From positions 62,001-126,000 of the IMG/VR virus record IMGVR_UViG_3300017917_000952: DNA of 64,000 bases; one strand, written 5' to 3'. Positions 1 to 61,172 of the stretch are shown piece by piece. Numbering within the stretch: position 1 is the first letter of the stretch; every line of letters starts with the position of its first letter. Position numbers and translations under genes: made by a program. Under the pieces are notes generated by a model, which saw only the letters and a program-made list of their open reading frames with translations, had not been told where the DNA came from and did not search any database.

Positions 1-330
1 AATATCAAAATCTACAATCTTATGAGGAATATTGTAGGCCTTACAAAATTCTCTAGCATAAACTATGTCGTGTTCATTAGTTCCAGCATTATGTCTGAGA
101 GTTAATGCTGTAAATTCTATACCTGCTTTAATAAAACTTCTAGCAGCAACTTCACCGTCTATCCCGCCGCTTAGACATAGGAATAAAGGCTTGTCAGTAA
201 GAGCTCTAATATTTTTTGCTGTTTGAATTAATTCACTTTTCCAATCTAACAGCGGGCGGCTTATGGGATTGAAATTTATCTTAAAGGTGCCGTCCTGGTT
301 AAGTAGATAAGTAAAGTTTACATTATTCAT
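1..330 (-). CDS. PP-loop (adenine nucleotide alpha-hydrolase) ATP pyrophosphatase-like protein, truncated at window edge
   Basis: Not in ORF track. Hand translation from CAT at 328-330 gives MNNVNFTYLLNQDGTFKINF...LFLCLSGGIDGEVAARSF...HDIVYAREFCKAYNIPHKIVDFDI, open to base 1. SGGxD PP-loop motif plus the typical downstream 'A..FC...IPH.IVD' segment. Confidence 0.7.
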   Translation of the reverse strand, partial: MNNVNFTYLLNQDGTFKINFNPISRPLLDWKSELIQTAKNIRALTDKPLFLCLSGGIDGEVAARSFIKAGIEFTALTLRHNAGTNEHDIVYAREFCKAYNIPHKIVDFDI

Positions 331-339
331 GGGTAGAGG

Positions 340-346
340 TATTTAT
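340..346 (-). promoter_or_regulatory. T4-late-like promoter motif ATAAATA
   Basis: 10 nt upstream of minus-strand CDS 1-330. Confidence 0.45.
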
Positions 347-716
347 GTTAAATTTAATGGTTAAATCAAAAATTCACAGGGCAACAGTTACAGATGGAAA
401 TCTTGCATACAAGGGAAGTATAACAGTAGATAGGAAGTTAATGAAGGCAGCAAATTTGCGACCTTTTGAATTCGTTCATGTTAACAATCTAAGCAATGCC
501 CAACACTGGGAAACTTATGTAATTCCTGGAAACGACGGAGAGATTATCCTAAACGGGCCACCTGCAAGATTATTTCAAAAGGGCGACAAAGTTGTTATAT
601 TAGGGTTCAGTTATCTATCAAACGACGAATTATCTACATTTGAGCACGTAGATGTAATGGTTACAGAAACTAACGAAATCACTAACGTGATCGTTTCAAA
701 AAGCGATTTTGAATAA
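345..716 (+). CDS. panD: Aspartate 1-decarboxylase (pyruvoyl-dependent)
   Basis: KSKIHRATVT, Gly-Ser autocleavage site (YKG/SITVD), ETYVI (Tyr58), NG..ARL, GDKVVI; SD-like AGAGGT upstream. Confidence 0.93.
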   Translation: MLNLMVKSKIHRATVTDGNLAYKGSITVDRKLMKAANLRPFEFVHVNNLSNAQHWETYVIPGNDGEIILNGPPARLFQKGDKVVILGFSYLSNDELSTFEHVDVMVTETNEITNVIVSKSDFE

Positions 717-719
717 ATA
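713..719 (+). promoter_or_regulatory. T4-late-like promoter motif ATAAATA
   Basis: Upstream of holin-like gene. Confidence 0.5.
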
Positions 720-736
720 AATTAACACTACACAAA

Positions 737-1270
737 ATGGAGCAACACATGTCCGAAGAAAAAATGAGCGAAAGCCAAAAGAAAAAAGAAGATTGGATGA
801 ACGCTAAATGGCGTCCTATGATGGGATGGATGTACATGGTCGTCTGTATGATGGACATGGTAATCTTTCCTGTTCTTTGGAGTCTATTGCAAACATTCGC
901 AAAAGTACCTCTAACCCAGTGGAACCCATTAACTCTACAGGGTGCTGGACTATTCCATATCGCTATGGGTGCAGTTCTAGGTATTGCAGCATTTGGAAGA
1001 ACACAAGAAAAATTAAACGGAGCAAACAATGGCGGCGCACAATTACCATCAAGCGGGTTTGCAGCATCTAGCGTACCTGCGTCAGGCGGTTTCGGAACAC
1101 CAGTTGCAGCAAGCGGCTTTGGGGCAGTCGGTAGCACAGTACCCGCGTATGGCGGAGGTGGCTTTGGAAGCGTATCTAGTACACCAACAGCGGACACAGG
1201 CTTCGGACAAGTTACCACAGGTTTCGGAGGAAAGCCTGCACCAATCCAACCTCCACAACCGTTAATTTAA
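737..1270 (+). CDS. 3-TM holin-like membrane protein (GTA_holin_3TM-like) with Gly/Phe-rich C-terminal tail
   Basis: KWRPMMGWMYMVVC...QWNPLTLQGAGLFHIAMGAVLGIAAFGRTQEK; hydrophobic segments then low-complexity tail. Confidence 0.6.
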   Translation: MEQHMSEEKMSESQKKKEDWMNAKWRPMMGWMYMVVCMMDMVIFPVLWSLLQTFAKVPLTQWNPLTLQGAGLFHIAMGAVLGIAAFGRTQEKLNGANNGGAQLPSSGFAASSVPASGGFGTPVAASGFGAVGSTVPAYGGGGFGSVSSTPTADTGFGQVTTGFGGKPAPIQPPQPLI

Positions 1271-1561: not shown

Positions 1562-2398
1562 ATGGCTGACCATTATCAAACACTCGGCGTAGACCGAACT
1601 GCCTCACAAGATGATATCAAAAAAGCGTTCCGCAAACTTGCGGCACAGCATCATCCTGACCGCGGCGGGGACACGGCCAAATTTCAAGAAATACAGGCTG
1701 CGTATGCTACACTTAGCGATCCAGAAAAACGGGCGCAGTACGACAACCCTACTCCACAATTTGAAGGCTTCCGACAATATGGCGGTATGCCTCCCGGGTT
1801 TGAAGATGTTATAAATCAAATGTTTGGAGGTAATCATCCGTTTAATGATATTTTTGGAAGACCGCATCCGACTCAACCTAAAAACAGAATATTAAACATC
1901 CAGACTACAATTACATTGGAAGAAGCATTCTCTGGTAAGGAGATGGTGGCGAACATCACTCTGCCCAGCGGCCGTGATCAAATTTTACAAATTAAAATTC
2001 CTGCCGGTATACAAGACGGTACCGTTCTACGTCTATCAGGTATGGGGGATGACAGTGTTAAGAATGCCCCACGAGGTGACATACATCTAACTGTTAGCAT
2101 ACAGCCTCATAAAATATTTCATAGAACAGGCGATGATCTAAATTGCACAATGAACTTAAACTGCATCGATGCAATGACTGGTAAAACTATCCAGATAGAA
2201 ACTGTAGATAAGAAAACACTCGAAGTTGCTGTTAAGGCCGGAACACAACACGGACAAATAATGAGTGCTGCCGGCTATGGTATGCCTAAGATGTCGGACA
2301 ATAGATTTCGGGGACGATTACTAATTCATATCAATATCGTAATCCCAGACAATCTGTCAGACGCACAAAAGCAGATACTCAAAGAACATTTTCAGTAA
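1562..2398 (+). CDS. dnaJ: DnaJ/CbpA-type co-chaperone (J domain plus C-terminal domain, no Zn finger)
   Basis: DHYQTLGV...AFRKLAAQHHPDRGG; G/F-rich linker; GDIHL and GRLLIHINIVIP C-terminal motifs. Confidence 0.92.
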   Translation: MADHYQTLGVDRTASQDDIKKAFRKLAAQHHPDRGGDTAKFQEIQAAYATLSDPEKRAQYDNPTPQFEGFRQYGGMPPGFEDVINQMFGGNHPFNDIFGRPHPTQPKNRILNIQTTITLEEAFSGKEMVANITLPSGRDQILQIKIPAGIQDGTVLRLSGMGDDSVKNAPRGDIHLTVSIQPHKIFHRTGDDLNCTMNLNCIDAMTGKTIQIETVDKKTLEVAVKAGTQHGQIMSAAGYGMPKMSDNRFRGRLLIHINIVIPDNLSDAQKQILKEHFQ

Positions 2399-2401
2399 AT
2401 A
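2395..2401 (+). promoter_or_regulatory. T4-late-like promoter motif GTAAATA
   Basis: Upstream of def, overlapping dnaJ stop. Confidence 0.4.
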
Positions 2402-2406
2402 CTTTT

Positions 2407-2901
2407 ATGAAGCAAGTTTTAAAATTTCCAAATGAATTACTTAGGGTTCAGGCTCCAGAATGGGATTTTGGTAATCCTCCTGTCGATCCTGCGACCTTAG
2501 AAAAAGAACTAATTGAAACCATGTTAGCCCACGACGGTATCGGGTTGGCAGCAACGCAGGTAGGATTGCTATATCGTGTATTTGTTATGGGATGGAGAGG
2601 CGCACCTGAAGAAGCAAAAGCATTTTTTAACCCCATAGTTGTTGCAACCGTAGACGAGGTTGAAGACCTCGAAGAAGGATGTTTGAGTTTTCCTGGAATA
2701 TATGTTAACATTAAACGTCCTAAAAAAATTCTTGCTAGATGGCAAAACTCAAAAGGAGAATGGGAAGAATCTGAATTCGAAGGATATAACTGTAAGTGCT
2801 TTCTACATGAACTAGATCATCTAGAAGGAATCGTTTTTCAAGACCGCGTAAGTTCCCTAAAGTGGGCCTTGGGCGTTAAAAAATCAAAAAAGAGGAAATA
2901 A
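2407..2901 (+). CDS. def: Peptide deformylase
   Basis: GIGLAATQVG, EGCLSFPG, HELDHLEG. Confidence 0.95.
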   Translation: MKQVLKFPNELLRVQAPEWDFGNPPVDPATLEKELIETMLAHDGIGLAATQVGLLYRVFVMGWRGAPEEAKAFFNPIVVATVDEVEDLEEGCLSFPGIYVNIKRPKKILARWQNSKGEWEESEFEGYNCKCFLHELDHLEGIVFQDRVSSLKWALGVKKSKKRK

Positions 2902-2907
2902 AACCAA

Positions 2908-5178
2908 ATGTTGGAACCGGATAAAGACTTAGAGAAAATTTTTGAACATGCTGTTCAACTAGCAAGTATGAACAAACACGAATACGTTACGCTAGAACAT
3001 TTTCTTTTTAGCATGTTAAGTAACGAACCGTTCGTGAAAGTATTAGAGGCATTTGGTACAGATGTAAAAACCTTTAGAGAAGACATCGAAAACTACATTG
3101 TCAACGAACTAAAAGACATTGCTAGTGAAACTGTTACTCGCCCTAAGAAAACAGTAAGTGTAGATCGAATGTTGAATCGTGCATTTACGCAGGTTCTGTT
3201 TAGCGGTCGTCAAATTATTAGCCCTGTTGACTGCTTTATTAGCCTATTCGGCGAAAAGAAAAGCCAGGCAAACTATTTCATAAGGAAAGCCAATATTGAT
3301 AAAGATATTTTCATCGACTTTATCAAGAAAGAAGTCTCTAAGAACGAAGAGGTAGAAGAAACCAAAGGTAGCAATCCTCAGATCGAAAGAATGTTGCTAC
3401 AGTTCTGCACTAACTTGAGCGCAAAGGCTAAGAGTAAAAAAATTGATCCGGTTATCGGTCGTGATAAAGAAATTGAAGAAATTCAATTAGTGCTTGCACG
3501 CCGTACAAAATCAAATGCTATTATGATCGGAGATCCCGGAGTAGGTAAGACCGCTATTGCAGAAGGTCTTGCTCGTAAGATCTACGAAGGCAATGTTCCT
3601 AAGTTTATTCAAGAGCACACAGTTTATAGTCTAGATATCAGCGGTATGCTAGCCGGTAGTAAATACCGCGGTGATTTTGAAGAACGCCTCAAGGCCGTTA
3701 TTAGTGCATTAGAGAAAAAAGGCAAGTGCATCTTGTTTATCGACGAAGCACATATGATGAATGGTGCAGGCGCTGCCGGTAACAGTAGCAATGATATGGC
3801 TAATATGCTCAAGAGCACACTAGGCAAAGGCACAATTAAGGTAATTGCTTCAACTACTTGGGACGAATATCGTAAACACTTCGAAAAAGATCGTGCGCTA
3901 ATGCGCCGATTCCAGCGTGTGGTAATTGACGAGCCCGATGAAGTAACTGCTATTAAGATTATTAAAGGTCTTAAGAAGTATTACGAAAAACATCACAGCG
4001 TTAAGATTACAAATCAAGCAGTTATTGATAGTGTCAAGTATAGTGTTAAGTATCTCAGTGATAAGAAATTACCTGACAAGGCTATCGACCTAATTGATTG
4101 TGCAAGTGCTCGCTTTAAACTTCGCAATGAAGAAGGCGGTATTGTTGACCACGATGAAATTCTATTCGAAGTTAGTCGTATTGCTAACATTCCGATTGAA
4201 GCCATTAACAGCAAAGAAACAAGTAACTTGCCTAATCTTGAAAAGAACATGAAGGCCAAGGTGTTTGGTCAAGAAACTGCTATTGATAATCTGTTAGACA
4301 AAGTGTTTATTGCACAGGCTGGCCTAAAAAATCCCAATAAGCCTGTAGGTAACTTCTTGTTTGTTGGCCCAACTGGTGTCGGTAAAACAGAAGCGGCAAA
4401 ACAACTAGCACAGAACCTAGGTATCAAATTAGTTCGCTTTGATATGAGTGAATATCAAGAACAGCATAGTGTTGCTAAATTCATCGGTGCGCCTCCAGGC
4501 TATGTAGGCTACGAGGATAACGCAGGATTGCTGATCACAAGTCTACAAGAAACACCAAACTGTGTGCTGTTGTTAGACGAAGTTGAAAAAGCACACCCAA
4601 GTGTGTTAACCGTTCTCCTACAAGTTATGGATAACGGCTTTGTTACAGGCAGCAATGGTAAGAAAGCAGATGCTCGCAATGCAATTATCATTATGACTTC
4701 TAACCTTGGTGCTGCCGATGCTGAAAAGAATGCAGTCGGTTTTGGTAGCCTAGAACGTGATAGCGATCCTAAAGATGCAATCAATAGGTTCTTTGCACCG
4801 GAATTCCGAAATCGTTTAGACGGTATCATTAGATTTGGCAAACTCGATCAGCAGACAATGATCAAGGTGGTGAAGAAATTTGTTGATGAACTTAATGCTC
4901 AGATTAAGGACAAAAATATTCATGTCAAACCAACTGTTGAAGCAGTTGAGTACTTGATCGAAAAAGGCTTTGATAGTAAAATGGGAGCTCGTCCGCTACA
5001 GAGATGCATTGATGAGATGATCAAGCGTCCCCTAAGTAAAGAGATTCTGTTTGGTAAACTATCAAATGGAGGCATTGTAGAAATCACAGTTGAAGATAAA
5101 TCTCTTAAACTCAATGTAGTAGACATTATGCCTATTAAAAAGAGCGAAGATGAAATTCAGGAAACTGACAACGCATAA
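2908..5178 (+). CDS. clpA: ClpA-type Clp protease ATP-binding subunit
   Basis: Clp N-domain (TLEHFL), two AAA+ modules (GDPGVGKT/FIDEAH; GPTGVGKT/LLDEVEKAH), no coiled-coil M domain, VGF ClpP-docking loop, MGARPL. Confidence 0.93.
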   Translation: MLEPDKDLEKIFEHAVQLASMNKHEYVTLEHFLFSMLSNEPFVKVLEAFGTDVKTFREDIENYIVNELKDIASETVTRPKKTVSVDRMLNRAFTQVLFSGRQIISPVDCFISLFGEKKSQANYFIRKANIDKDIFIDFIKKEVSKNEEVEETKGSNPQIERMLLQFCTNLSAKAKSKKIDPVIGRDKEIEEIQLVLARRTKSNAIMIGDPGVGKTAIAEGLARKIYEGNVPKFIQEHTVYSLDISGMLAGSKYRGDFEERLKAVISALEKKGKCILFIDEAHMMNGAGAAGNSSNDMANMLKSTLGKGTIKVIASTTWDEYRKHFEKDRALMRRFQRVVIDEPDEVTAIKIIKGLKKYYEKHHSVKITNQAVIDSVKYSVKYLSDKKLPDKAIDLIDCASARFKLRNEEGGIVDHDEILFEVSRIANIPIEAINSKETSNLPNLEKNMKAKVFGQETAIDNLLDKVFIAQAGLKNPNKPVGNFLFVGPTGVGKTEAAKQLAQNLGIKLVRFDMSEYQEQHSVAKFIGAPPGYVGYEDNAGLLITSLQETPNCVLLLDEVEKAHPSVLTVLLQVMDNGFVTGSNGKKADARNAIIIMTSNLGAADAEKNAVGFGSLERDSDPKDAINRFFAPEFRNRLDGIIRFGKLDQQTMIKVVKKFVDELNAQIKDKNIHVKPTVEAVEYLIEKGFDSKMGARPLQRCIDEMIKRPLSKEILFGKLSNGGIVEITVEDKSLKLNVVDIMPIKKSEDEIQETDNA

Positions 5179-9600: not shown

Positions 9601-10630
9601 CCACGGTCGTGATGGCAAGATTAGCCACAGCACCTACGGTTCAAGAGACAAAGGCGGTTCTACAGGACCTGATCGAACCGCTAAAGCAACTACGGCTGAC
9701 AAGATGATGAAACACGCTCATGACGTTATGATGAAGTCGATGAGCGATGCTGACAAGGTGAAAAAGGGATGGCGCAATCCTAACATGAAAGAGCAAGGTA
9801 TCGAAGAATACGGTGATACTGCCAAGGGTCAGAAGATGTTGACTAAAGTCCAGAAACGTGCTGTAGATAGAGTAGTATCTAAGAAAGCAGATACTGATCC
9901 AGCATACGCAAAAAAGAATAAAGCCACTGCTGACCGTGCTTGGGATAGAATGAAAGACAAGGATCTGGCAGAAGGCTGGAAAGAAAAAGTCGGAGCCGCC
10001 GCATTAGCAGGAGCAGTGGCTACAGGTGCCGGTGCTAATACTCCAAAGGTTCCACTCGACAAGGCAATTCAACAGGCAACTGCGGTATATAACATAAACA
10101 AGGCTGTTAAAAAACATAAAGAAAAAGAAGCCGAGAAGCGTAAGGCGGGCGAGAAAGAAGTTAAAGAGTCCGATAGTCCAGCAATGGCACAAACTGCTCG
10201 TCGCTTAACAGATCCTAAAGACGGTGCTGTTGCAAAACTACGTGCTGCTGGAGATAAGCGTAGAGAAGATCAATTAAAGAGTAGAGATATTGCCAAGAAG
10301 AACGAAGCAATGCTACCTAAGAGTGCTTTTTCTGGCAGCGACAAAAACAAATTAGGTTCAGCAGGACAATGGAAGAACACAGGCCCTAGTAAGAACCGCC
10401 CAGCAAGAGCAGGCGACCTAGTAGGTGGTGCTGAAGAAAGTATTGAGAAAGAAGAAAAGCAACGCCTAGATCCTAAGTGCTGGAAAGGCTATCGTAAAGC
10501 AGGCACTAAGATGAAGGGCGGTGTTCGAGTAAACAACTGCGTTCCAGTTAGCGAAGATGTTGAAAACATTTTTGCCGCTCTTATCGATAAGATTATCGTA
10601 AATGAAGCAATACAAAATAACAAGCGCTGA
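6689..10630 (+). CDS. Large multidomain protein: Pol-beta-type NTase + ligase-like adenylation domain + HxGH cytidylyltransferase-like domain + modular C-terminal tail
   Basis: SGSS...GDID...QID; KVDG...CEVL...EGIVI...IKV; GHKGH...MVGED...MSFTKLR; start MILREFF at 6689 after SD AAGGTAGG. Confidence 0.7.
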   Translation: MILREFFKRTLLEGGNLEIDGAQAQQIELKVHNRAYIVPILNTLLNAINDGFQQSQGGPLWSAKVLKSRKYLSGSSLHFFNTDIPDAEFERVKPKVGDIDTQINKDAEPQLAQWLNSVKGQVVGNATFLGYSRGNEQYSSLWELTDPPIKVQIDFEFVDYTEKDEPSDWAGFSHSSSWDDLSQGIKGVFHKFLIQAFTKLTTQEFLLRKMVGRGKARAEQDVPTTDNMFSFAVSSKEGGGLRPKYEPVTDEKGRPLVVDGLPVMRALPASGYEKDIGKIFQSVFGNKVNGAALKKVLPKTWSFTGLLDIMNMVLSPEEKEQVFDGFIDKLFAPGAQGLYKGDPQRDMTEKNAAVNYALKVLGITPPKNLEQMRQEYLKNYKVASEGAMGLDRPVTEADEPAVKAQLRKGMPHLRDLKPADFLDLVDELRSEGGRFKLQNIPLNVKVDGFGGRFGKDSQGRPFMGTSRTEPKYKAGFLDYHKEKGTTDPEILGRAANFDKLFEEMMNAIKIVDSKLGPDFLTDKQVTCEVLFLPFATQTEEGKLKFVGIEYDQLPQGVDLVLVPYRIVEASTGKDLPDEAAQQLANLGQHGSVMFMSNRLIQKDGLDVTEIINPLDNLEELKKIVSDTAGKRDRASLELRREVEAKLKPVQIALEKAIDEDPNIIGKDKLGQDYEGIVINSRLGPIKVTSQRQKDIIAQKNAAKAAARADAGRTNTNKTAVVAIGSFVGHKGHEELWDYTVKKAAELGGDPYLFMGNAVGKDDPIPVDVKLQTWHKMYPKYAKNISGTMAGGTLMQKIKHELINPLPGKPPRYDNIVIMVGEDQAGMNIAQALMKAVNKFPGYEHVKVSLEPTPRGTGMSFTKLRNVLKDPNATPEQQYALWSQGFDEAKLGKDWILHLMDITRKGMGITQKPTQPAAPVPVAETRLFNALVRPSLNEDHSTVGGWGKGAYDTYSGTRHGRGVAEMDKSQPSHGRDGKISHSTYGSRDKGGSTGPDRTAKATTADKMMKHAHDVMMKSMSDADKVKKGWRNPNMKEQGIEEYGDTAKGQKMLTKVQKRAVDRVVSKKADTDPAYAKKNKATADRAWDRMKDKDLAEGWKEKVGAAALAGAVATGAGANTPKVPLDKAIQQATAVYNINKAVKKHKEKEAEKRKAGEKEVKESDSPAMAQTARRLTDPKDGAVAKLRAAGDKRREDQLKSRDIAKKNEAMLPKSAFSGSDKNKLGSAGQWKNTGPSKNRPARAGDLVGGAEESIEKEEKQRLDPKCWKGYRKAGTKMKGGVRVNNCVPVSEDVENIFAALIDKIIVNEAIQNNKR

Positions 10631-11692: not shown

Positions 11693-13119
11693 CAAACGAA
11701 TTCAAAGTAAAAAAATATAAAGACGCAACTGTCTATACTTTAGAAAGTGCATCTGCTGGTGCTACTGGTGCAGGCGCAATTGCAACAGCATCGAGCAGTA
11801 TCGGAGGCGTTCGTCGTAGAGATAATCTAATTGCCCAAGAGAGCGATACTATTAAAGTACCAGTTACACAAAAGCCTCGCCAAGGACCTTTGCGTCCTCA
11901 AACTGGTGCTGGACAACATCGTGACAAAAAGAAAGAACAAAAGCAAGGCAAAGAAAAGCATCGTAAACCATACATGGAAGAATTAAAAACTCGCCTAGCC
12001 GCTTTAAAAAATAAACTAGGCGAAAACAGCGAGCTTGCACAACAGATGATGGCTCTTGCAAGGTCTAGAGGAATGAATCCTCGAATTGCCGGTACTCCGG
12101 AACAAGAGCGCGAACGCACACAACAAATGATGGCGCAACGTGCAAAAGATAGAGAAGAAAAAGATCGACAATCTGCAAGCGATGATGCTGCTAAATTACC
12201 AGAACTAAAAGCAGAATACGATGCACTGTTTAAAAAGTATAATAGTCTAGGTGGCAGAAACTGGCAGTATGCCGACCGTGAGCAGAATTTGTCAGATAGC
12301 GAACGTGAAGCACGTAGCATAGAGCCAAAATTAAATCAATTGGCTGGTAGAATTGCTCGTGCAGAAAAATCACAAGGTGTAGCAGAAGGCGCAGAGTTCG
12401 GTGCTTACTATAGCGAACAAGTTGCACAACAAATTTTTAACAAGCGTCAGGATATCACATCTGAAGACGAAGTATTGAATCAAGCATACCACATTGTGGC
12501 CGACGAGCAAGGACAAAGACGTGCTCGTTATATGTTTAACTACGATGAAGACTTCCCAAGTGATGTTGTATCTAATTACTTCCATTTACAGAAGCAAGGT
12601 GTAGCAGAAGGTGATGCATATTTTACACATTTAGAAAACATGCTCAACGAAGATTGGCAAAAAGTTAATCGTCGAGATAAGACAGATGGCATGAGCCGAA
12701 AGGCAGTTAAGGCCTACCGTCGAGAGAATCCCGGTAGCAAATTAAAGACCGCTGTAACTACAAAGCCTAGCAAACTAAAGAAAGGAGGCAAGGCTGCAAA
12801 GCGCCGCAAGAGTTTCTGTGCTCGCATGAAGGGCATGAAGAAAGCCCATGCCAGTGCTAAGACTAAGCGCAACCCGGATAGTCCAATTAATAAGGCCTTA
12901 CGCCGTTGGAACTGCGAGGAAGATGCATACATGAACAGTCTAAACCAACAGGTCCTTGAGAAATTAAATCCTCAAGCAGATGTAGACGTATGGGTGCAGG
13001 ATTTTCAAAAAGCAGATCCTAACAAGTACAAACAATTTAAAAATAAAACTCCTCAGAAAAAAGCGCAGATGGCGGTAGCAGCACACTATGCCGCTAACGA
13101 ACCAAGTAAGAAAAAATGA
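11689..13119 (+). CDS. Modular protein with QGVAEG repeats and a basic RRKSFCARM...ALRRWNC module
   Basis: ORF track 11674-13119; probable start MTNEFK at 11689; repeated QGVAEG. Confidence 0.7.
   Translation: MTNEFKVKKYKDATVYTLESASAGATGAGAIATASSSIGGVRRRDNLIAQESDTIKVPVTQKPRQGPLRPQTGAGQHRDKKKEQKQGKEKHRKPYMEELKTRLAALKNKLGENSELAQQMMALARSRGMNPRIAGTPEQERERTQQMMAQRAKDREEKDRQSASDDAAKLPELKAEYDALFKKYNSLGGRNWQYADREQNLSDSEREARSIEPKLNQLAGRIARAEKSQGVAEGAEFGAYYSEQVAQQIFNKRQDITSEDEVLNQAYHIVADEQGQRRARYMFNYDEDFPSDVVSNYFHLQKQGVAEGDAYFTHLENMLNEDWQKVNRRDKTDGMSRKAVKAYRRENPGSKLKTAVTTKPSKLKKGGKAAKRRKSFCARMKGMKKAHASAKTKRNPDSPINKALRRWNCEEDAYMNSLNQQVLEKLNPQADVDVWVQDFQKADPNKYKQFKNKTPQKKAQMAVAAHYAANEPSKKK
12373..12611 (+). 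repeat. 17-nt direct repeat CAAGGTGTAGCAGAAGG flanking an in-frame 222-nt module
   Basis: Copies at 12373-12389 and 12595-12611; 12-nt core GGTGTAGCAGAA also at 9569-9580. Confidence 0.8.
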
Positions 13120-13622
13120 GATTCGTTGAGTTCAAAGCAAGCGATTATGAAATACATGATCGTCCGAAACTGGATAAGATCTTGCTAGAACTCTGTCACC
13201 ATATTTTGGAAGGTCAGCGTATTGATTCAAACAAATACGGGATGGTTGCGGCCTGTGTCTTAGACCCCGAAAACCGCAAAGTCTACGGTGTTAACGAGGC
13301 GGCCGGAGACAATAAAAGACGCCACGCAGAACGTGTGGCCATAGATAGATATGAGGAAAACTATGGCCAAGTACCAAAAGGCAGTATTATCATTACAACC
13401 CTAAGTCCTTGTAATGAAGACCATACTGAAATGGCCGATGGTAGATACGGTGAGAGTTGTACAGATCTAGTAAACTCGTCAAACTGTCGCAAGGTCTATT
13501 GCGGATATATAGATCCAACGCAGCACAACGACCACGAAGAATATACCTTAGAAGAAACACAAGAAGGTAAAATCAAAGAACTCTGCAAACGATTCGCAGA
13601 CACTTTTCTGAACGCAAAATAA
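13116..13622 (+). CDS. Zn-dependent cytidine/dCMP deaminase-fold protein
   Basis: HAE...TLSPC-x15-C...VYCG; 'GMVAACVLD' first strand. Confidence 0.8.
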   Translation: MRFVEFKASDYEIHDRPKLDKILLELCHHILEGQRIDSNKYGMVAACVLDPENRKVYGVNEAAGDNKRRHAERVAIDRYEENYGQVPKGSIIITTLSPCNEDHTEMADGRYGESCTDLVNSSNCRKVYCGYIDPTQHNDHEEYTLEETQEGKIKELCKRFADTFLNAK

Positions 13623-60254: not shown

Positions 60255-61172
60255 ATGACTTTAGGAACTACAATAAGAAAAGCCAAATACCTAAACAACA
60301 GAGACCTGCTAGCAGAAATTCATAGGAGCAAATGCTCCTTTTCAAGTTTTACTAAGCCAGAATACAGTACATACGATATTATTCTACCAAGCACAGATAA
60401 AGTTAATCAACGCACTCTTGCCGATGCCAGAAGAAATAAAGCAAAACGTATAGGCTTGCAAGCATTTACTGAAGCAAGACTCTCAGGCGATAAAAAGGTA
60501 AAACTAGCAGACTTAACTCCGGATTATAAGTCTATACCTAAGACAGATGTTATTATCAGAATAATGACATTTGATCATATTCCCCTTGCTCCGGGCCGTA
60601 AAAAGACTACCAAGACTACAGCAGATAGTCACGAAAAGGTAAATTTTCCTCCTTTCCAACACTGGAAACTAGACGAAGAAACTGAAGAACTAGTCTGTGT
60701 AGGTAAAAGTCATTGGAAGGGCCCTGTTGATAAAGGACAGTTCAGCAAAGACCACGGACGCATTACTGAAAACTTAGGTAAGATGTTTATCAAACTAAGT
60801 GAACGCTATGCACAGAGAAGCAACTGGCGTGGATACACCTATGTAGATGAGATGAAGGGACAGGCTATTTTACAGTTAAGTCAGATCGGTCTTCAATTTG
60901 ACGAGTCTAAATCAGAGAATCCATTTGCTTATTACACAGCCGCAGTCACTAATAGTTTTACTAGGATTCTAAATCTAGAGAAGAAAAATCAAAACATTCG
61001 TGACGATTTACTCGAAGAAAACGGCCTAACTCCAAGTCTTACTAGACAAAACCAGCACGAATACGCCGAAGAAACAGCACGCCAGGCAGAACTATACAAG
61101 AACATGCGTATGCCAAAAAGCGAAGAAGTTGATATTGAAGAAGAGTTTGAGGATGAAGGAACTGAGGCTTGA
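60255..61172 (+). CDS. gp55: Late-transcription sigma factor (T4 gp55-like) with internal/N-terminal extension
   Basis: YLNNRDLL.EI; NWRGYTYVDEM..QAI...LQFDESKSENPFAYYT....NSF.RI...EKK. Confidence 0.82.
   Translation: MTLGTTIRKAKYLNNRDLLAEIHRSKCSFSSFTKPEYSTYDIILPSTDKVNQRTLADARRNKAKRIGLQAFTEARLSGDKKVKLADLTPDYKSIPKTDVIIRIMTFDHIPLAPGRKKTTKTTADSHEKVNFPPFQHWKLDEETEELVCVGKSHWKGPVDKGQFSKDHGRITENLGKMFIKLSERYAQRSNWRGYTYVDEMKGQAILQLSQIGLQFDESKSENPFAYYTAAVTNSFTRILNLEKKNQNIRDDLLEENGLTPSLTRQNQHEYAEETARQAELYKNMRMPKSEEVDIEEEFEDEGTEA

What the first reader, a model, noticed from the sequence alone, without database searches (positions are those of the whole stretch)
1..716. panD head-to-head (14 bp apart) with a PP-loop ATP pyrophosphatase, both with late-type promoter motifs
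Seen: an intact PanD (G/S cleavage site, Tyr58; NGPPAR instead of the usual NGAAAR) diverges from an SGGIDG PP-loop protein. ATAAATA lies on the minus strand (340-346) and a GATAAGTA variant on the plus strand (306-313), at or inside the partner gene. Known: PanD makes beta-alanine, and PP-loop enzymes adenylate a carboxylate and ligate an amine. Inference: the two may be an amine-supply plus amide-ligase pair for a late modification (virion glycan/protein or base), or panD may simply boost host CoA. panD is not a classical phage gene.
Basis: partly seen in the sequence, partly recalled or inferred. Interest (0 to 1): 0.6.

Follow-up and report, generated by a model that had tools for sequence, protein, structure and literature searches.

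The report
Phage PanD-like decarboxylase paired with amidoligases
A large pond-water phage carries an unusual relative of aspartate decarboxylase back to back with two stand-alone asparagine-synthetase-like ATP enzymes, a pairing kept in several related phages, which points to a still unknown late-infection amide-forming pathway rather than plain vitamin B5 supply.

Summary
An intact 123-aa panD homologue (window 345-716, +) lies 14 bp from a divergent PP-loop gene. The full PP-loop ORF is 290 aa and is followed by a 291-aa paralogue, 59% identical.

The PP-loop proteins are stand-alone asparagine-synthetase-B-type synthetase domains without a glutaminase domain. They belong to a large, almost purely viral, uncharacterised family.

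ATAAATA is a real T4-type late promoter here. It is enriched before gene starts and precedes structural genes, a gp55-like sigma is encoded, and it is conserved before the ligase gene in seven loci. GATAAGTA before panD is not supported.

The PanD belongs to a distinct clade in which the specificity residue Arg54 is lost (His54-Trp55; NGPP replaces NGAA). In my sample this clade is not seen beside panB/panC and often sits beside unrelated amide ligases.

panD and the ligase are adjacent in five arrangement types. One relative lacks exactly paralogue A plus panD. Several phages carry this PanD without the ligase.

Best reading, at moderate confidence: a late module that makes a beta-alanyl-type amide on an unknown acceptor. 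No enzyme activity, substrate or transcript was tested, and the record is about 58% complete.

The parts
1..330 (-). First 110 codons of AsnB-like amidoligase paralogue A. The full ORF is 290 aa at G000:C1:61458-62330, i.e. L001:11458-12330. Paralogue B (291 aa, L001:10581-11456, 59% identical) follows one base after A's stop, outside the window.
   Evidence: ORFs. PP-loop motif S54-G-G-I-D-G59. Only weak Pfam and NCBIfam hits to Asn_synthase, QueC, MnmA and NadE. AlphaFold model with pLDDT 92.8. Best structural matches are the asparagine synthetase synthetase domain (Z 14.4, 256 residues aligned), beta-lactam synthetase (13.5) and AsnB (13.2).
340..346 (-). ATAAATA, a T4-type late promoter element 9 nt upstream of the ATG of paralogue A. 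It overlaps the panD start codon on the other strand.
   Evidence: Genome-wide enrichment before gene starts. Conserved before the AsnB-like gene in L001, L004, L138, L137, L136, L012 and L010. The genes behind the motif that have a PHROG match are all structural.
331..344 (.). 14-bp divergent intergenic spacer. It holds a GAGG (336-339, +) five bases before the panD ATG, a likely ribosome-binding site.
   Evidence: Sequence read directly. The ribosome-binding role is inferred.
345..716 (+). panD-like pyruvoyl-dependent decarboxylase, 123 aa, of the 'W55 clade' (His54-Trp55; Asn70-Gly71-Pro72-Pro73).
   Evidence: Pfam and NCBIfam matches. Alignment to solved PanDs puts His54 where they have Arg54. 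Motif seen in all 120 nearest homologues. Clade separated from canonical PanDs with SH-aLRT 98.
306..313 (+). Judged not to be a feature.
   Evidence: 7 copies against 11.5 expected, none intergenic. It lies in the conserved N-F-T-Y codons of paralogue A.
713..719 (+). A second ATAAATA. It overlaps the panD stop codon and lies 17 nt before the holin ATG, so it is the late promoter of the downstream holin gene.
   Evidence: Retained at the junction in L007, which lacks panD.
737..1270 (+). Three-transmembrane holin, the downstream neighbour and flank of the cassette. It is context, not part of the module.
   Evidence: Pfam GTA_holin_3TM 7.3e-07 and PHROG holin 8.8e-08.
60255..61172 (+). gp55-like late sigma factor, the likely reader of the ATAAATA promoters.
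   Evidence: T4 gp55 matches at E 3.9e-7. PHROG 'sigma factor for late transcription' at 4.5e-85.

Best explanation
The locus is a three-gene accessory cassette of a T4-related jumbo phage from pond water. It has two parts.

(1) A PanD-like enzyme. It should cleave itself at Gly24/Ser25 to make its pyruvoyl cofactor and then remove the alpha-carboxyl group from an amino acid. Its pocket for the distal carboxylate is remodelled: Arg54 is His, an invariant Trp follows, and Ala74-Ala75 are Pro-Pro.

(2) Two tandem, co-transcribed asparagine-synthetase-B-type synthetase domains (A and B) that lack the glutaminase domain. Such enzymes use ATP to adenylate a carboxylate and let an amine attack it, which makes an amide.

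All characterised AsnB-type substrates carry the activated carboxylate beta to an amine: the Asp side chain, carboxyethyl-arginine and carboxymethyl-proline. This comes from established knowledge of those families. Beta-alanine and the aspartate side chain both fit that pattern.

I therefore propose that the module makes a beta-alanyl (3-aminopropionyl) amide on an acceptor amine. Two orders of reaction give the same product.
- Decarboxylate Asp to beta-alanine, then ligate it.
- Ligate first to give a beta-aspartyl amide, then decarboxylate it. The lost Arg54 fits this order better.

The ligase genes are read late, from an ATAAATA promoter recognised by a gp55-like sigma. That favours a virion, envelope or late-metabolite acceptor over a DNA precursor.

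What is shown: gene identities, fold, motifs, conserved linkage, and promoter statistics. What is inferred: self-cleavage, the substrate, the order of steps, the product and acceptor, and the timing of panD itself.
For: Gene identity.
- panD homologue.
- AsnB-type fold without a glutaminase domain.
- Both paralogues keep every family-invariant residue (E33, SGGxDxE, N85, D88, C96, K231, R245, K247, G250, E252).

Linkage of panD and the ligase gene.
- Divergent pair in ours and in L004-6, L138, L137 and L136. L136 has different neighbours (DUF2452, Dam methylase, radical SAM).
- Co-directional pair with a 1-nt stop/start overlap in L012.
- L007 is 80-85% identical in the flanks and lacks exactly L001:11472-12705, which is paralogue A plus panD.
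- PanD-adjacent ligases are spread over the family tree.

The PanD clade.
- R54 is replaced and W55 is invariant in the 120 nearest homologues.
- The clade is monophyletic with SH-aLRT 98.
- Canonical PanDs beside panB/panC keep NGxR and NGAAA.
- Alicyclobacillus ferrooxydans has a canonical PanD and panC, plus a W55 paralogue beside a YheC/D ATP-grasp ligase.
- Three small genomes (two recorded as Parcubacteria and Liptonbacteria, one unnamed at about 0.8 Mb) place the W55 type next to or near CofE-like ligases and PLP enzymes. panC was sought in two of them and not found.
- Published work calls Arg54 strictly conserved, a specificity determinant and the binder of the beta-carboxylate: PMC3314653, PMC3975893.

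Aspartyl theme.
- One family member is fused to an Asp/Asn beta-hydroxylase domain.
- One HW-type PanD sits beside a weak match to such a hydroxylase.

Late expression.
Against: - No biochemical or expression data exist. No RNA runs hold the locus.
- The linkage is facultative. Two CheckV-complete viral records, G006 (classed as a provirus) and G007, carry the HW-type PanD without any family member. So does the cultured Achromobacter phage 2-1, where panD lies in the replication module.
- L007 keeps paralogue B without panD, and distant family members have no panD nearby. The ligases therefore do not strictly need it.
- His54 might still bind a carboxylate. One MAG (G003) has only an HW-type PanD together with a panC, so plain aspartate decarboxylation is not excluded.
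- Much of the adjacency may reflect shared descent, because PanD and ligase identities fall together across the loci.
- The promoter of panD in the divergent arrangement is unknown.
- The ligase contexts in cellular genomes are few (n = 4).
- The record is only about 58% complete, so the absence of panB/panC is not proven.
Confidence: 0.4

Rival explanations
1. panD is a stand-alone auxiliary metabolic gene that makes beta-alanine from aspartate. It feeds the host PanC and so raises pantothenate and CoA during infection. The neighbouring ligase genes are functionally unrelated.
For: - The protein passes the NCBIfam panD equivalog cut-off (109.4 against 106) and keeps all catalytic residues except Arg54.
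- HW-type PanD occurs alone in two complete viral records and in Achromobacter phage 2-1.
- MAG G003 has only an HW-type PanD, plus panC.
- The phage also carries other host-physiology genes: PhoH, DnaJ, peptide deformylase, ClpA.
Against: - Arg54, Ala74 and Ala75, which are called strictly conserved and specificity-determining, are all replaced across the whole clade.
- The clade is not beside panB/panC in any context sampled, whereas canonical PanDs on viral contigs are.
- A. ferrooxydans keeps a canonical PanD as well as the W55 paralogue.
- Two small genomes with a W55 PanD gave no panC match.
- Repeated adjacency, a translational overlap and joint loss with the ligase argue for coupling.
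Confidence: 0.2
2. The AsnB-like enzymes work without PanD. They would be ammonia-dependent amidotransferases acting on a nucleotide, cofactor, sugar acid or modified DNA base, in the manner of NadE, QueC or uronamide-forming AsnB homologues. On this view panD merely travels with them as a neighbouring moron.
For: - The best sequence-profile hit to a solved structure is NH3-dependent NAD synthetase (1.6e-05). Stand-alone NadE has a similar size and scores Z about 10.
- Distant family members sit in clusters with sugar epimerases, methyltransferases, an acetyltransferase, a QueC-like gene and radical SAM enzymes, or beside fatty-acid-desaturase-like genes, with no panD.
- Fusions to a SAM methyltransferase exist.
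- L007 keeps paralogue B alone.
Against: - Adjacency with panD recurs in five arrangement types and across ligase identities down to about 40%.
- Paralogue A and panD are gained or lost as one unit.
- Structural similarity is clearly higher to AsnB-type domains (Z 13-14.4, about 250 residues aligned) than to NadE, LarE or QueC (Z 9-10.6, about 150-180 aligned).
Confidence: 0.2
3. The pair is a non-homologous pantothenate module. PanD makes beta-alanine, and an AsnB-like enzyme stands in for PanC by adenylating pantoate and joining it to beta-alanine.
For: - PanC chemistry is also carboxylate adenylation followed by attack of an amine (established knowledge).
- No panC was found in the 206-kb record.
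- The W55 PanD sits beside other amide ligases in genomes that gave no panC match.
Against: - Pantoate is not a beta-amino acid, unlike every characterised AsnB-type substrate.
- Most hosts have panC.
- No panB was found in the phage record; panE was not searched for.
- Arg54 is lost.
- Late expression, together with structural genes and the holin, is odd timing for cofactor supply.
Confidence: 0.05

Closest known systems
Aspartate 1-decarboxylase PanD (Pfam PF02261; NCBIfam TIGR00223; solved structures such as 2c45, 3oug, 3plx)
   Same: - Same size.
- 37-52% identity to bacterial PanDs.
- Gly24-Ser25 self-cleavage site.
- Lys9, His11, Tyr22, Thr57, Tyr58, the Asn-Gly of the NG loop, and Asn110 (Asn112 in M. 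tuberculosis numbering) are all kept.
   Different: - Arg54 is His, followed by an invariant Trp55.
- Ala74-Ala75 are Pro-Pro.
- It belongs to a separate clade (SH-aLRT 98) found mainly on viral contigs, in small genomes recorded as Parcubacteria and Liptonbacteria, and in a few other bacteria.
- It is not beside panB/panC.
- It is often beside unrelated amide ligases.
Synthetase domain of the asparagine synthetase B family (AsnB, human ASNS, beta-lactam synthetase, carbapenam synthetase; Pfam PF00733)
   Same: - PP-loop SGGxDS motif.
- Same fold over about 240-256 residues (Z 13-14.4).
- The expected chemistry is carboxylate adenylation followed by amide formation.
   Different: - No N-terminal glutaminase domain; only about 290 aa.
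- Sequence similarity is marginal: paralogue A scores below the Pfam cut-off and B above it.
- The family is almost purely viral and unannotated. It has 396 clusters at 50% identity with E <= 1e-30, and the Atlas lists many virus-only clusters.
- It is present in two tandem copies here.
T4 late transcription (TATAAATA promoter read by gp55)
   Same: - The core ATAAATA is enriched before gene starts and precedes structural genes.
- A gp55-like sigma is encoded.
   Different: - The first T of the T4 octamer is not required.
- In 14 of the 33 copies the motif lies only 4-9 nt before the ATG, which implies leaderless or near-leaderless late mRNAs. No transcript data exist.
Ligate-then-decarboxylate logic of other decarboxylases: the pyruvoyl enzyme phosphatidylserine decarboxylase, and the CoaB/CoaC steps of CoA synthesis
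   Same: An amino acid is first joined to a carrier and its free carboxyl group is removed afterwards. This is an analogy drawn from established knowledge and was not tested here.
   Different: These are unrelated folds and substrates. CoaC uses a flavin, not a pyruvoyl group. The order of steps in the phage module is unknown.

Membership tests
PanD / aspartate 1-decarboxylase | Match to the family models above their curated cut-offs | tested here: met
   Pfam PF02261 at 124.3 bits against a cut-off of 25. NCBIfam TIGR00223 at 109.4 bits against 106, so only just above.
PanD / aspartate 1-decarboxylase | Gly24-Ser25 self-processing site and the catalytic residues Lys9, His11, Tyr22, Thr57, Tyr58 | tested here: met
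   All are present by alignment to solved PanDs and invariant in the clade. Self-cleavage itself was not tested.
PanD / aspartate 1-decarboxylase | Arg54, the specificity residue that binds the substrate's beta-carboxylate, and Gly73-Ala74-Ala75. All are listed as strictly conserved in PMC3314653. | tested here: not met
   His54 replaces Arg54. In the 120 nearest homologues the position is H 93, S 15, R 3 and others 9. Pro72-Pro73 stand in place of Ala74-Ala75.
PanD / aspartate 1-decarboxylase | Pathway context: panB/panC in the same genome or beside the gene | tested here: not met
   tblastn found no panB or panC in the 206-kb record, which is only about 58% complete. None of the W55-type contexts sampled has panB/panC next to the gene, whereas canonical PanDs on viral contigs do.
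PanD / aspartate 1-decarboxylase | Decarboxylation of L-aspartate to beta-alanine | not testable with these tools
   Needs an enzyme assay or complementation of a panD mutant.
Asparagine synthetase B-type synthetase domain (PP-loop N-type ATP pyrophosphatase) | PP-loop SGGxDS motif | tested here: met
   SGGIDG in paralogue A and SGGIDS in B. S54, G55, G56, D58 and E60 are 92-100% conserved in 159 family representatives.
Asparagine synthetase B-type synthetase domain (PP-loop N-type ATP pyrophosphatase) | Pfam Asn_synthase match above the gathering cut-off | tested here: inconclusive
   Paralogue B scores 32.9 bits against a cut-off of 21 (met). Paralogue A scores 16.8 bits (not met). Both match only the first third or so of the model.
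Asparagine synthetase B-type synthetase domain (PP-loop N-type ATP pyrophosphatase) | Fold of the AsnB C-terminal domain | tested here: met
   Model with pLDDT 92.8. VIA-align gives 8sue_B Z 14.4 (256 aligned), 1mbz Z 13.5, 1ct9 Z 13.2 and 1q19 Z 13.0, against NadE and LarE at about 10. Atlas TM to bacterial AsnB is 0.65-0.69.
Asparagine synthetase B (glutamine-hydrolysing) | N-terminal Ntn glutaminase domain | tested here: not met
   The protein is 290 aa and the synthetase-domain match covers residues 1-278. There is no GATase hit.
QueC / TilS / NadE / MnmA | Family model above cut-off, or best structural match | tested here: not met
   The equivalog models score far below their cut-offs (NCBIfam MnmA 24.8 against 284, TilS_N 16.9 against 93.6). 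Three short Pfam domain models lie near their cut-offs: QueC 20.1 against 22, ThiI 19.4 against 20.5, and the MnmA-type tRNA_Me_trans HUP domain 22.4 against 20.6, just above. All matches cover only the PP-loop region. Structural scores are lower than for AsnB-type domains.
T4-type late promoter | A-T-rich -10 element of TATAAATA type, enriched upstream of late (structural) genes | tested here: met
   33 copies, 21 intergenic, 24 within 40 nt of a same-strand start. All 6 downstream genes with a PHROG match, out of 10 tested, are structural.
T4-type late promoter | A gp55-type late sigma factor encoded by the phage | tested here: met
   Window 60255-61172. T4 gp55 matches at E 3.9e-7, and PHROG 12791 'sigma factor for late transcription' at 4.5e-85.
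T4-type late promoter | Transcripts that start just downstream of the motif late in infection | not testable with these tools
   No RNA runs hold this sequence.

The most novel reading that the evidence does not exclude
The W55 clade of PanD-like proteins (x54-W55, NGPP) would be a functionally distinct family of pyruvoyl decarboxylases. It would not serve pantothenate synthesis. It would work together with an ATP-dependent amide ligase: AsnB-like in phages, CofE-like in small genomes recorded as Parcubacteria and Liptonbacteria, and ATP-grasp in Alicyclobacillus. The ligase would first make a beta-aspartyl amide, and the decarboxylase would then turn it into a beta-alanyl group. In jumbo phages the module would be switched on late, to put a 3-aminopropionyl (cationic) group on a virion, envelope or other late target.
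Probability: 0.2. Interest if true: 0.75.

Novelty: new variant of a known kind. Interest (0 to 1): 0.55.

Why it matters
PanD is treated as a one-function enzyme whose active-site residues are called strictly conserved. Automatic annotation would name this gene 'aspartate 1-decarboxylase' and file it as a CoA-boosting auxiliary gene.

The evidence here points to a separate clade with a rebuilt specificity pocket. In my sample that clade is not seen beside pantothenate genes and is repeatedly found beside three unrelated kinds of amide ligase. That makes a new decarboxylase specificity directly testable.

It also gives a first functional handle on a large family of stand-alone AsnB-like proteins, almost entirely viral (hundreds of 50%-identity clusters), all currently labelled 'hypothetical'. 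If the product is a beta-alanyl-type modification made late in infection, it would add a new kind of phage-made modification chemistry.

Two cultured organisms offer ready test systems: Achromobacter phage 2-1, which has an HW-type PanD, and Alicyclobacillus ferrooxydans, which has both a canonical and a W55 paralogue.

Tried and rejected
- blastn and tblastn of the locus and of paralogue A against 50,697 GenBank phage records gave no match.
- A single-protein scan of viral contigs with PanD found nothing. An alignment-based scan was needed.
- PHROGs gave only a weak hit of A and B to an unannotated family, and none for PanD.
- The sigma-70 promoter scan around the locus found 8 sites against 9.9 +/- 3.0 in shuffles, so it gives no usable promoter for panD.
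- I rejected GATAAGTA as a promoter.
- I tested whether gp86 ('ATP binding protein'), next to the PanD of Rhodococcus phage Jace, is a family member. hhalign gave a probability of 0.2%, so it is not.
- I considered that the acidic residue at position 156 (GGGEQ, against GGGPSP in paralogue B) marks B as inactive. I dropped this because only 74% of 159 family members have an acid there and B keeps all truly invariant residues.
- Reads. No RNA run holds the locus. The contig 'joints' that skip the cassette in estuary and aquatic runs have short anchors and are flagged unreliable, so I do not use them. The same call does show near-identical contigs over the ligase and panD genes in three studies; contigs spanning the A/panD junction itself lie in two of them (X2 and X4).
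- Literature searches for phage panD found nothing relevant.
- I did not run complex prediction, because I do not claim that the proteins bind each other.
Full report
**Where the window lies**

The window is bases 62001-126000 of a 206,751-bp IMG/VR viral record. The record is linear, CheckV rates it 58% complete, and its GC content is 41%. Near-identical contigs that cover this locus occur in pond, aquatic and estuary metagenomes from three studies. None of the runs is RNA.

The phage is T4-related. It has a gp6-like baseplate wedge protein, tail tube and tail fibre genes, and a gp55-like late sigma factor.

**Check of the observation**

The panD ORF is at 345-716 (+) and encodes 123 aa. The divergent PP-loop ORF starts at 330 on the minus strand, which leaves 14 bp between them.

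Fetching the upstream DNA (L001 = G000:50001-66000) shows two things.
- The PP-loop ORF is 290 aa long. I call it paralogue A (L001:11458-12330, minus strand).
- A 291-aa paralogue B follows one base after A's stop (L001:10581-11456) and is 59% identical. A and B therefore form one transcription unit.

The cassette sits inside a lysis region. On one side lie the spanins, a GH19-type endolysin and DUF4337. On the other lie a three-transmembrane holin, then DnaJ, peptide deformylase and ClpA.

**Promoters**

ATAAATA occurs 33 times on both strands, against about 80 expected from base composition. 21 copies lie in the 4.7% of the record that is intergenic. 24 lie within 40 nt upstream of a same-strand start, and 14 of the 33 are only 4-9 nt from the ATG.

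I scanned ten genes that follow the motif. Six have a PHROG match, and all six are structural. A gp55-type sigma factor is encoded at window 60255-61172.

The motif lies 9 nt before the ATG of paralogue A. It is conserved before the homologous gene in seven loci whose surrounding sequence has diverged. A second copy, at 713-719, serves the holin. The ligase genes are therefore very probably late genes.

GATAAGTA before panD is not enriched: 7 copies against 11.5 expected, none intergenic. It falls in conserved codons of paralogue A. The promoter of panD in the divergent arrangement remains unknown. In locus L012, panD is co-directional with the ligase gene and overlaps its stop codon by one base, so there it would share the ATAAATA promoter.

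**What the PP-loop proteins are**

Family models give only marginal hits, and only to the PP-loop region: Asn_synthase, QueC, MnmA, NadE and TilS.

An AlphaFold model built from a 28-sequence alignment is confident, with pLDDT 92.8. Its best structural matches are listed below.

| Match | Z | Residues aligned |
|---|---|---|
| Human asparagine synthetase, synthetase domain | 14.4 | 256 |
| Beta-lactam synthetase | 13.5 | 238 |
| E. coli AsnB | 13.2 | 236 |
| Carbapenam synthetase | 13.0 | 247 |
| NadE, LarE, QueC | 9-10.6 | about 150-180 |

There is no glutaminase domain.

In the ESM Atlas the nearest clusters are virus-only 'hypothetical proteins', with TM 0.79-0.88. Bacterial AsnB follows at 0.65-0.69.

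A profile search of 1.84 billion cluster representatives finds 396 clusters at E <= 1e-30 and 1325 at E <= 1e-10, nearly all about 290 aa long. Rare fusions carry an N-terminal Asp/Asn beta-hydroxylase domain or a SAM methyltransferase. Both paralogues keep all family-invariant residues.

**What the PanD is**

It passes the Pfam model easily and the NCBIfam panD equivalog only narrowly. It keeps the self-cleavage site and the catalytic residues.

Aligned to solved PanDs, it has His54 where they have Arg54. It has Pro-Pro where they have Ala74-Ala75. The literature lists Arg54, Gly73, Ala74 and Ala75 among the strictly conserved residues. It assigns Arg54 to substrate specificity and to binding of the beta-carboxylate (PMC3314653, PMC3975893).

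The change is a property of a whole clade. In the 120 nearest homologues, position 54 is H (93), S (15), R (3) or another residue (9). Position 55 is always W, and the NG loop reads NGPP in most.

In a tree of 80 sequences, the 37 rows with W55 form one group (SH-aLRT 98), separate from 38 canonical R54 sequences. Among the 80 best matches in 185,579 species genomes, 76 have R54. The only four of the W55 type are the four closest to the phage protein.

**Context of the two PanD types**

Canonical PanDs on viral contigs (L025-L030) sit directly after panB and panC. W55-type genes do not.

- Alicyclobacillus ferrooxydans has a canonical PanD and a panC elsewhere in its genome. Its W55 paralogue is divergent from a YheC/D-type ATP-grasp ligase and lies near an MFS transporter.
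- In three small genomes the W55 gene lies next to, or 4 kb from, a CofE-like (F420 gamma-glutamyl ligase family) gene and a PLP enzyme. I searched two of them for panC and found none.
- One Rhodospirillaceae MAG has only an HW-type PanD together with a panC. The HW type could therefore still serve pantothenate synthesis.
- The phage record has no panB or panC, but it is incomplete.

**Linkage of PanD and the ligase**

Adjacency occurs in five arrangement types. A sixth locus, L007, lacks the pair.

| Locus | Arrangement |
|---|---|
| This phage and L004-6 | Divergent; paralogues A and B present |
| L138 | Divergent; single ligase copy |
| L137 | Divergent; 12-bp gap; different flank |
| L136 | Divergent; 35-bp gap; neighbours DUF2452, Dam methylase, radical SAM |
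| L012 | Co-directional; 1-nt stop/start overlap |
| L007 | Lacks exactly paralogue A plus panD (1,234 bp); flanks 80-85% identical; keeps B-type copy |

PanD-adjacent ligases are scattered over the family tree. Across these loci, PanD identity to ours falls from 93% to 62% while ligase identity falls from 73% to about 40%. That pattern fits long co-inheritance of the pair.

There is evidence against an obligate pair.
- Two further contigs carry family members only 7-25 kb away from panD.
- Two CheckV-complete viral records carry none. One of them is classed as a provirus.
- The cultured Achromobacter phage 2-1 has an HW-type PanD in its replication module and no family member.
- Distant ligase family members sit in other clusters without panD. 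Their neighbours are sugar epimerases, a methyltransferase, an acetyltransferase, a radical SAM enzyme, or several fatty-acid-desaturase-like genes.

**Mechanism proposed (inference)**

AsnB-type domains adenylate a carboxylate that lies beta to an amine, and an amine then attacks. This holds for the aspartate side chain, for carboxyethyl-arginine and for carboxymethyl-proline. Beta-alanine and the aspartate side chain both fit the pattern.

A PanD-like enzyme combined with a glutaminase-less AsnB-like ligase would therefore give a beta-alanyl amide by either order of steps. The loss of the residue that binds the free beta-carboxylate fits a substrate whose beta-carboxylate is already amidated: asparagine, or a beta-aspartyl amide. 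That is the ligate-then-decarboxylate order. Two further observations fit an aspartyl substrate: one ligase is fused to an Asp/Asn beta-hydroxylase domain, and one HW-type PanD sits beside a weak match to such a hydroxylase.

Late expression, alongside structural genes and the holin, suggests a virion, envelope or late-metabolite acceptor. The acceptor, the roles of A versus B, and the timing of panD are unknown.

**Verdict**

It needs three corrections.
- The ligase is a tandem pair of AsnB-type domains from a large viral family.
- Only the ligase side has a supported late promoter.
- The PanD is not a canonical aspartate decarboxylase by its specificity residues.

The association is frequent but facultative, and nothing has been tested biochemically. 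I rate it a new variant of known kinds, of moderate interest, with clear experiments available.

Noticed in passing
whole record; examples at window 10858, 53283 (-), 101812 (-), 108155, 110474: In 14 of the 33 copies, the late promoter core ATAAATA sits only 4-9 nt before the ATG, often with no Shine-Dalgarno sequence in between. This suggests that many late mRNAs of this phage are leaderless or nearly so.
   Followed up: partly
window 60255-61172 (+): A 305-aa gp55-like late sigma factor, longer than the 184-aa protein of T4. It matches PHROG 12791 at 4.5e-85. An ATAAATA lies 137 nt upstream.
   Followed up: partly
window 1562-5178 (+): A chaperone and protease block of DnaJ (278 aa), peptide deformylase (164 aa) and a full ClpA-like double AAA+ ATPase (756 aa). 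It is conserved in the relatives L004-L007 and L138.
   Followed up: no
L001:7981-10584 and window 737-1270: The lysis genes are split by the cassette. The i-spanin, o-spanin (LysC/Rz1-like), a lipoprotein, a GH19-type endolysin and DUF4337 lie on one side, and the three-transmembrane holin on the other. The holin has a long Gly/Ala/Ser-rich C-terminal tail. In L007 the two halves are separated by paralogue B alone.
   Followed up: partly
L001:5025-5780 (+) (G000:55025-55780): A fatty-acid-desaturase-like gene (251 aa) with an ATAAATA 5 nt before its ATG. Homologues, in three copies, flank the AsnB-like gene in a distant 145-kb contig. This may be a second recurrent partner of the ligase family, possibly pointing to a lipid.
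   Followed up: partly
L117:3849-5378; L116:5001-6439 and 9665-10375; L039:3746-6393: In three small genomes the W55-type PanD recurs with a CofE-like (F420 gamma-glutamyl ligase family) gene and a PLP-dependent enzyme. Two are recorded as Parcubacteria and Liptonbacteria. In one case the genes lie inside a cell-wall gene cluster (MraY, MreB, MreC, PBP2). Two of the genomes gave no panC match.
   Followed up: partly
L038:3285-6405 and L120:1498-1869: Alicyclobacillus ferrooxydans TC-34, a cultured isolate, has two PanD paralogues: a canonical R54 one, and an I54-W55 one divergent from a YheC/D ATP-grasp ligase and near an MFS transporter. It is a convenient organism for testing the W55 clade.
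   Followed up: partly
L148:3480-3875 (Achromobacter phage 2-1, OQ974181.1): A cultured phage carries an HW-type PanD (NGKHWETY, LHGPPAH) between its RNase H and DNA polymerase genes, i.e. in the replication module, without an AsnB-like partner. Rhodococcus phage Jace has an intermediate R54-W55 form.
   Followed up: partly
L010:3935-10766; L128:1438-3766; G000:192088-193296 and 11911-13194: Divergent members of the AsnB-like family sit directly beside large radical SAM enzymes (about 475-530 aa). L010 has three family copies in one cluster. This phage has two homologues of those radical SAM genes elsewhere in its genome.
   Followed up: no
G000:200001-206751: The last 6.7 kb of the record has 51.7% GC, against 37-45% elsewhere. 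This could be a different module, a host junction or an assembly chimera.
   Followed up: no
window 682-1218 (-): A 178-aa open frame antisense to the holin gene. It is proline- and alanine-rich; I ran no search on it. It is most likely a shadow of the Gly/Ala-rich holin tail and not a gene. It misled my crude gene caller.
   Followed up: partly
L001:9500-14500 in runs X4 and X7: Summed contig depth is tens to hundreds of times higher over the endolysin and holin genes than over the AsnB-like and panD genes. Many related phages in estuary and aquatic samples share the lysis genes, but at 85% likeness or more they do not share this cassette.
   Followed up: no
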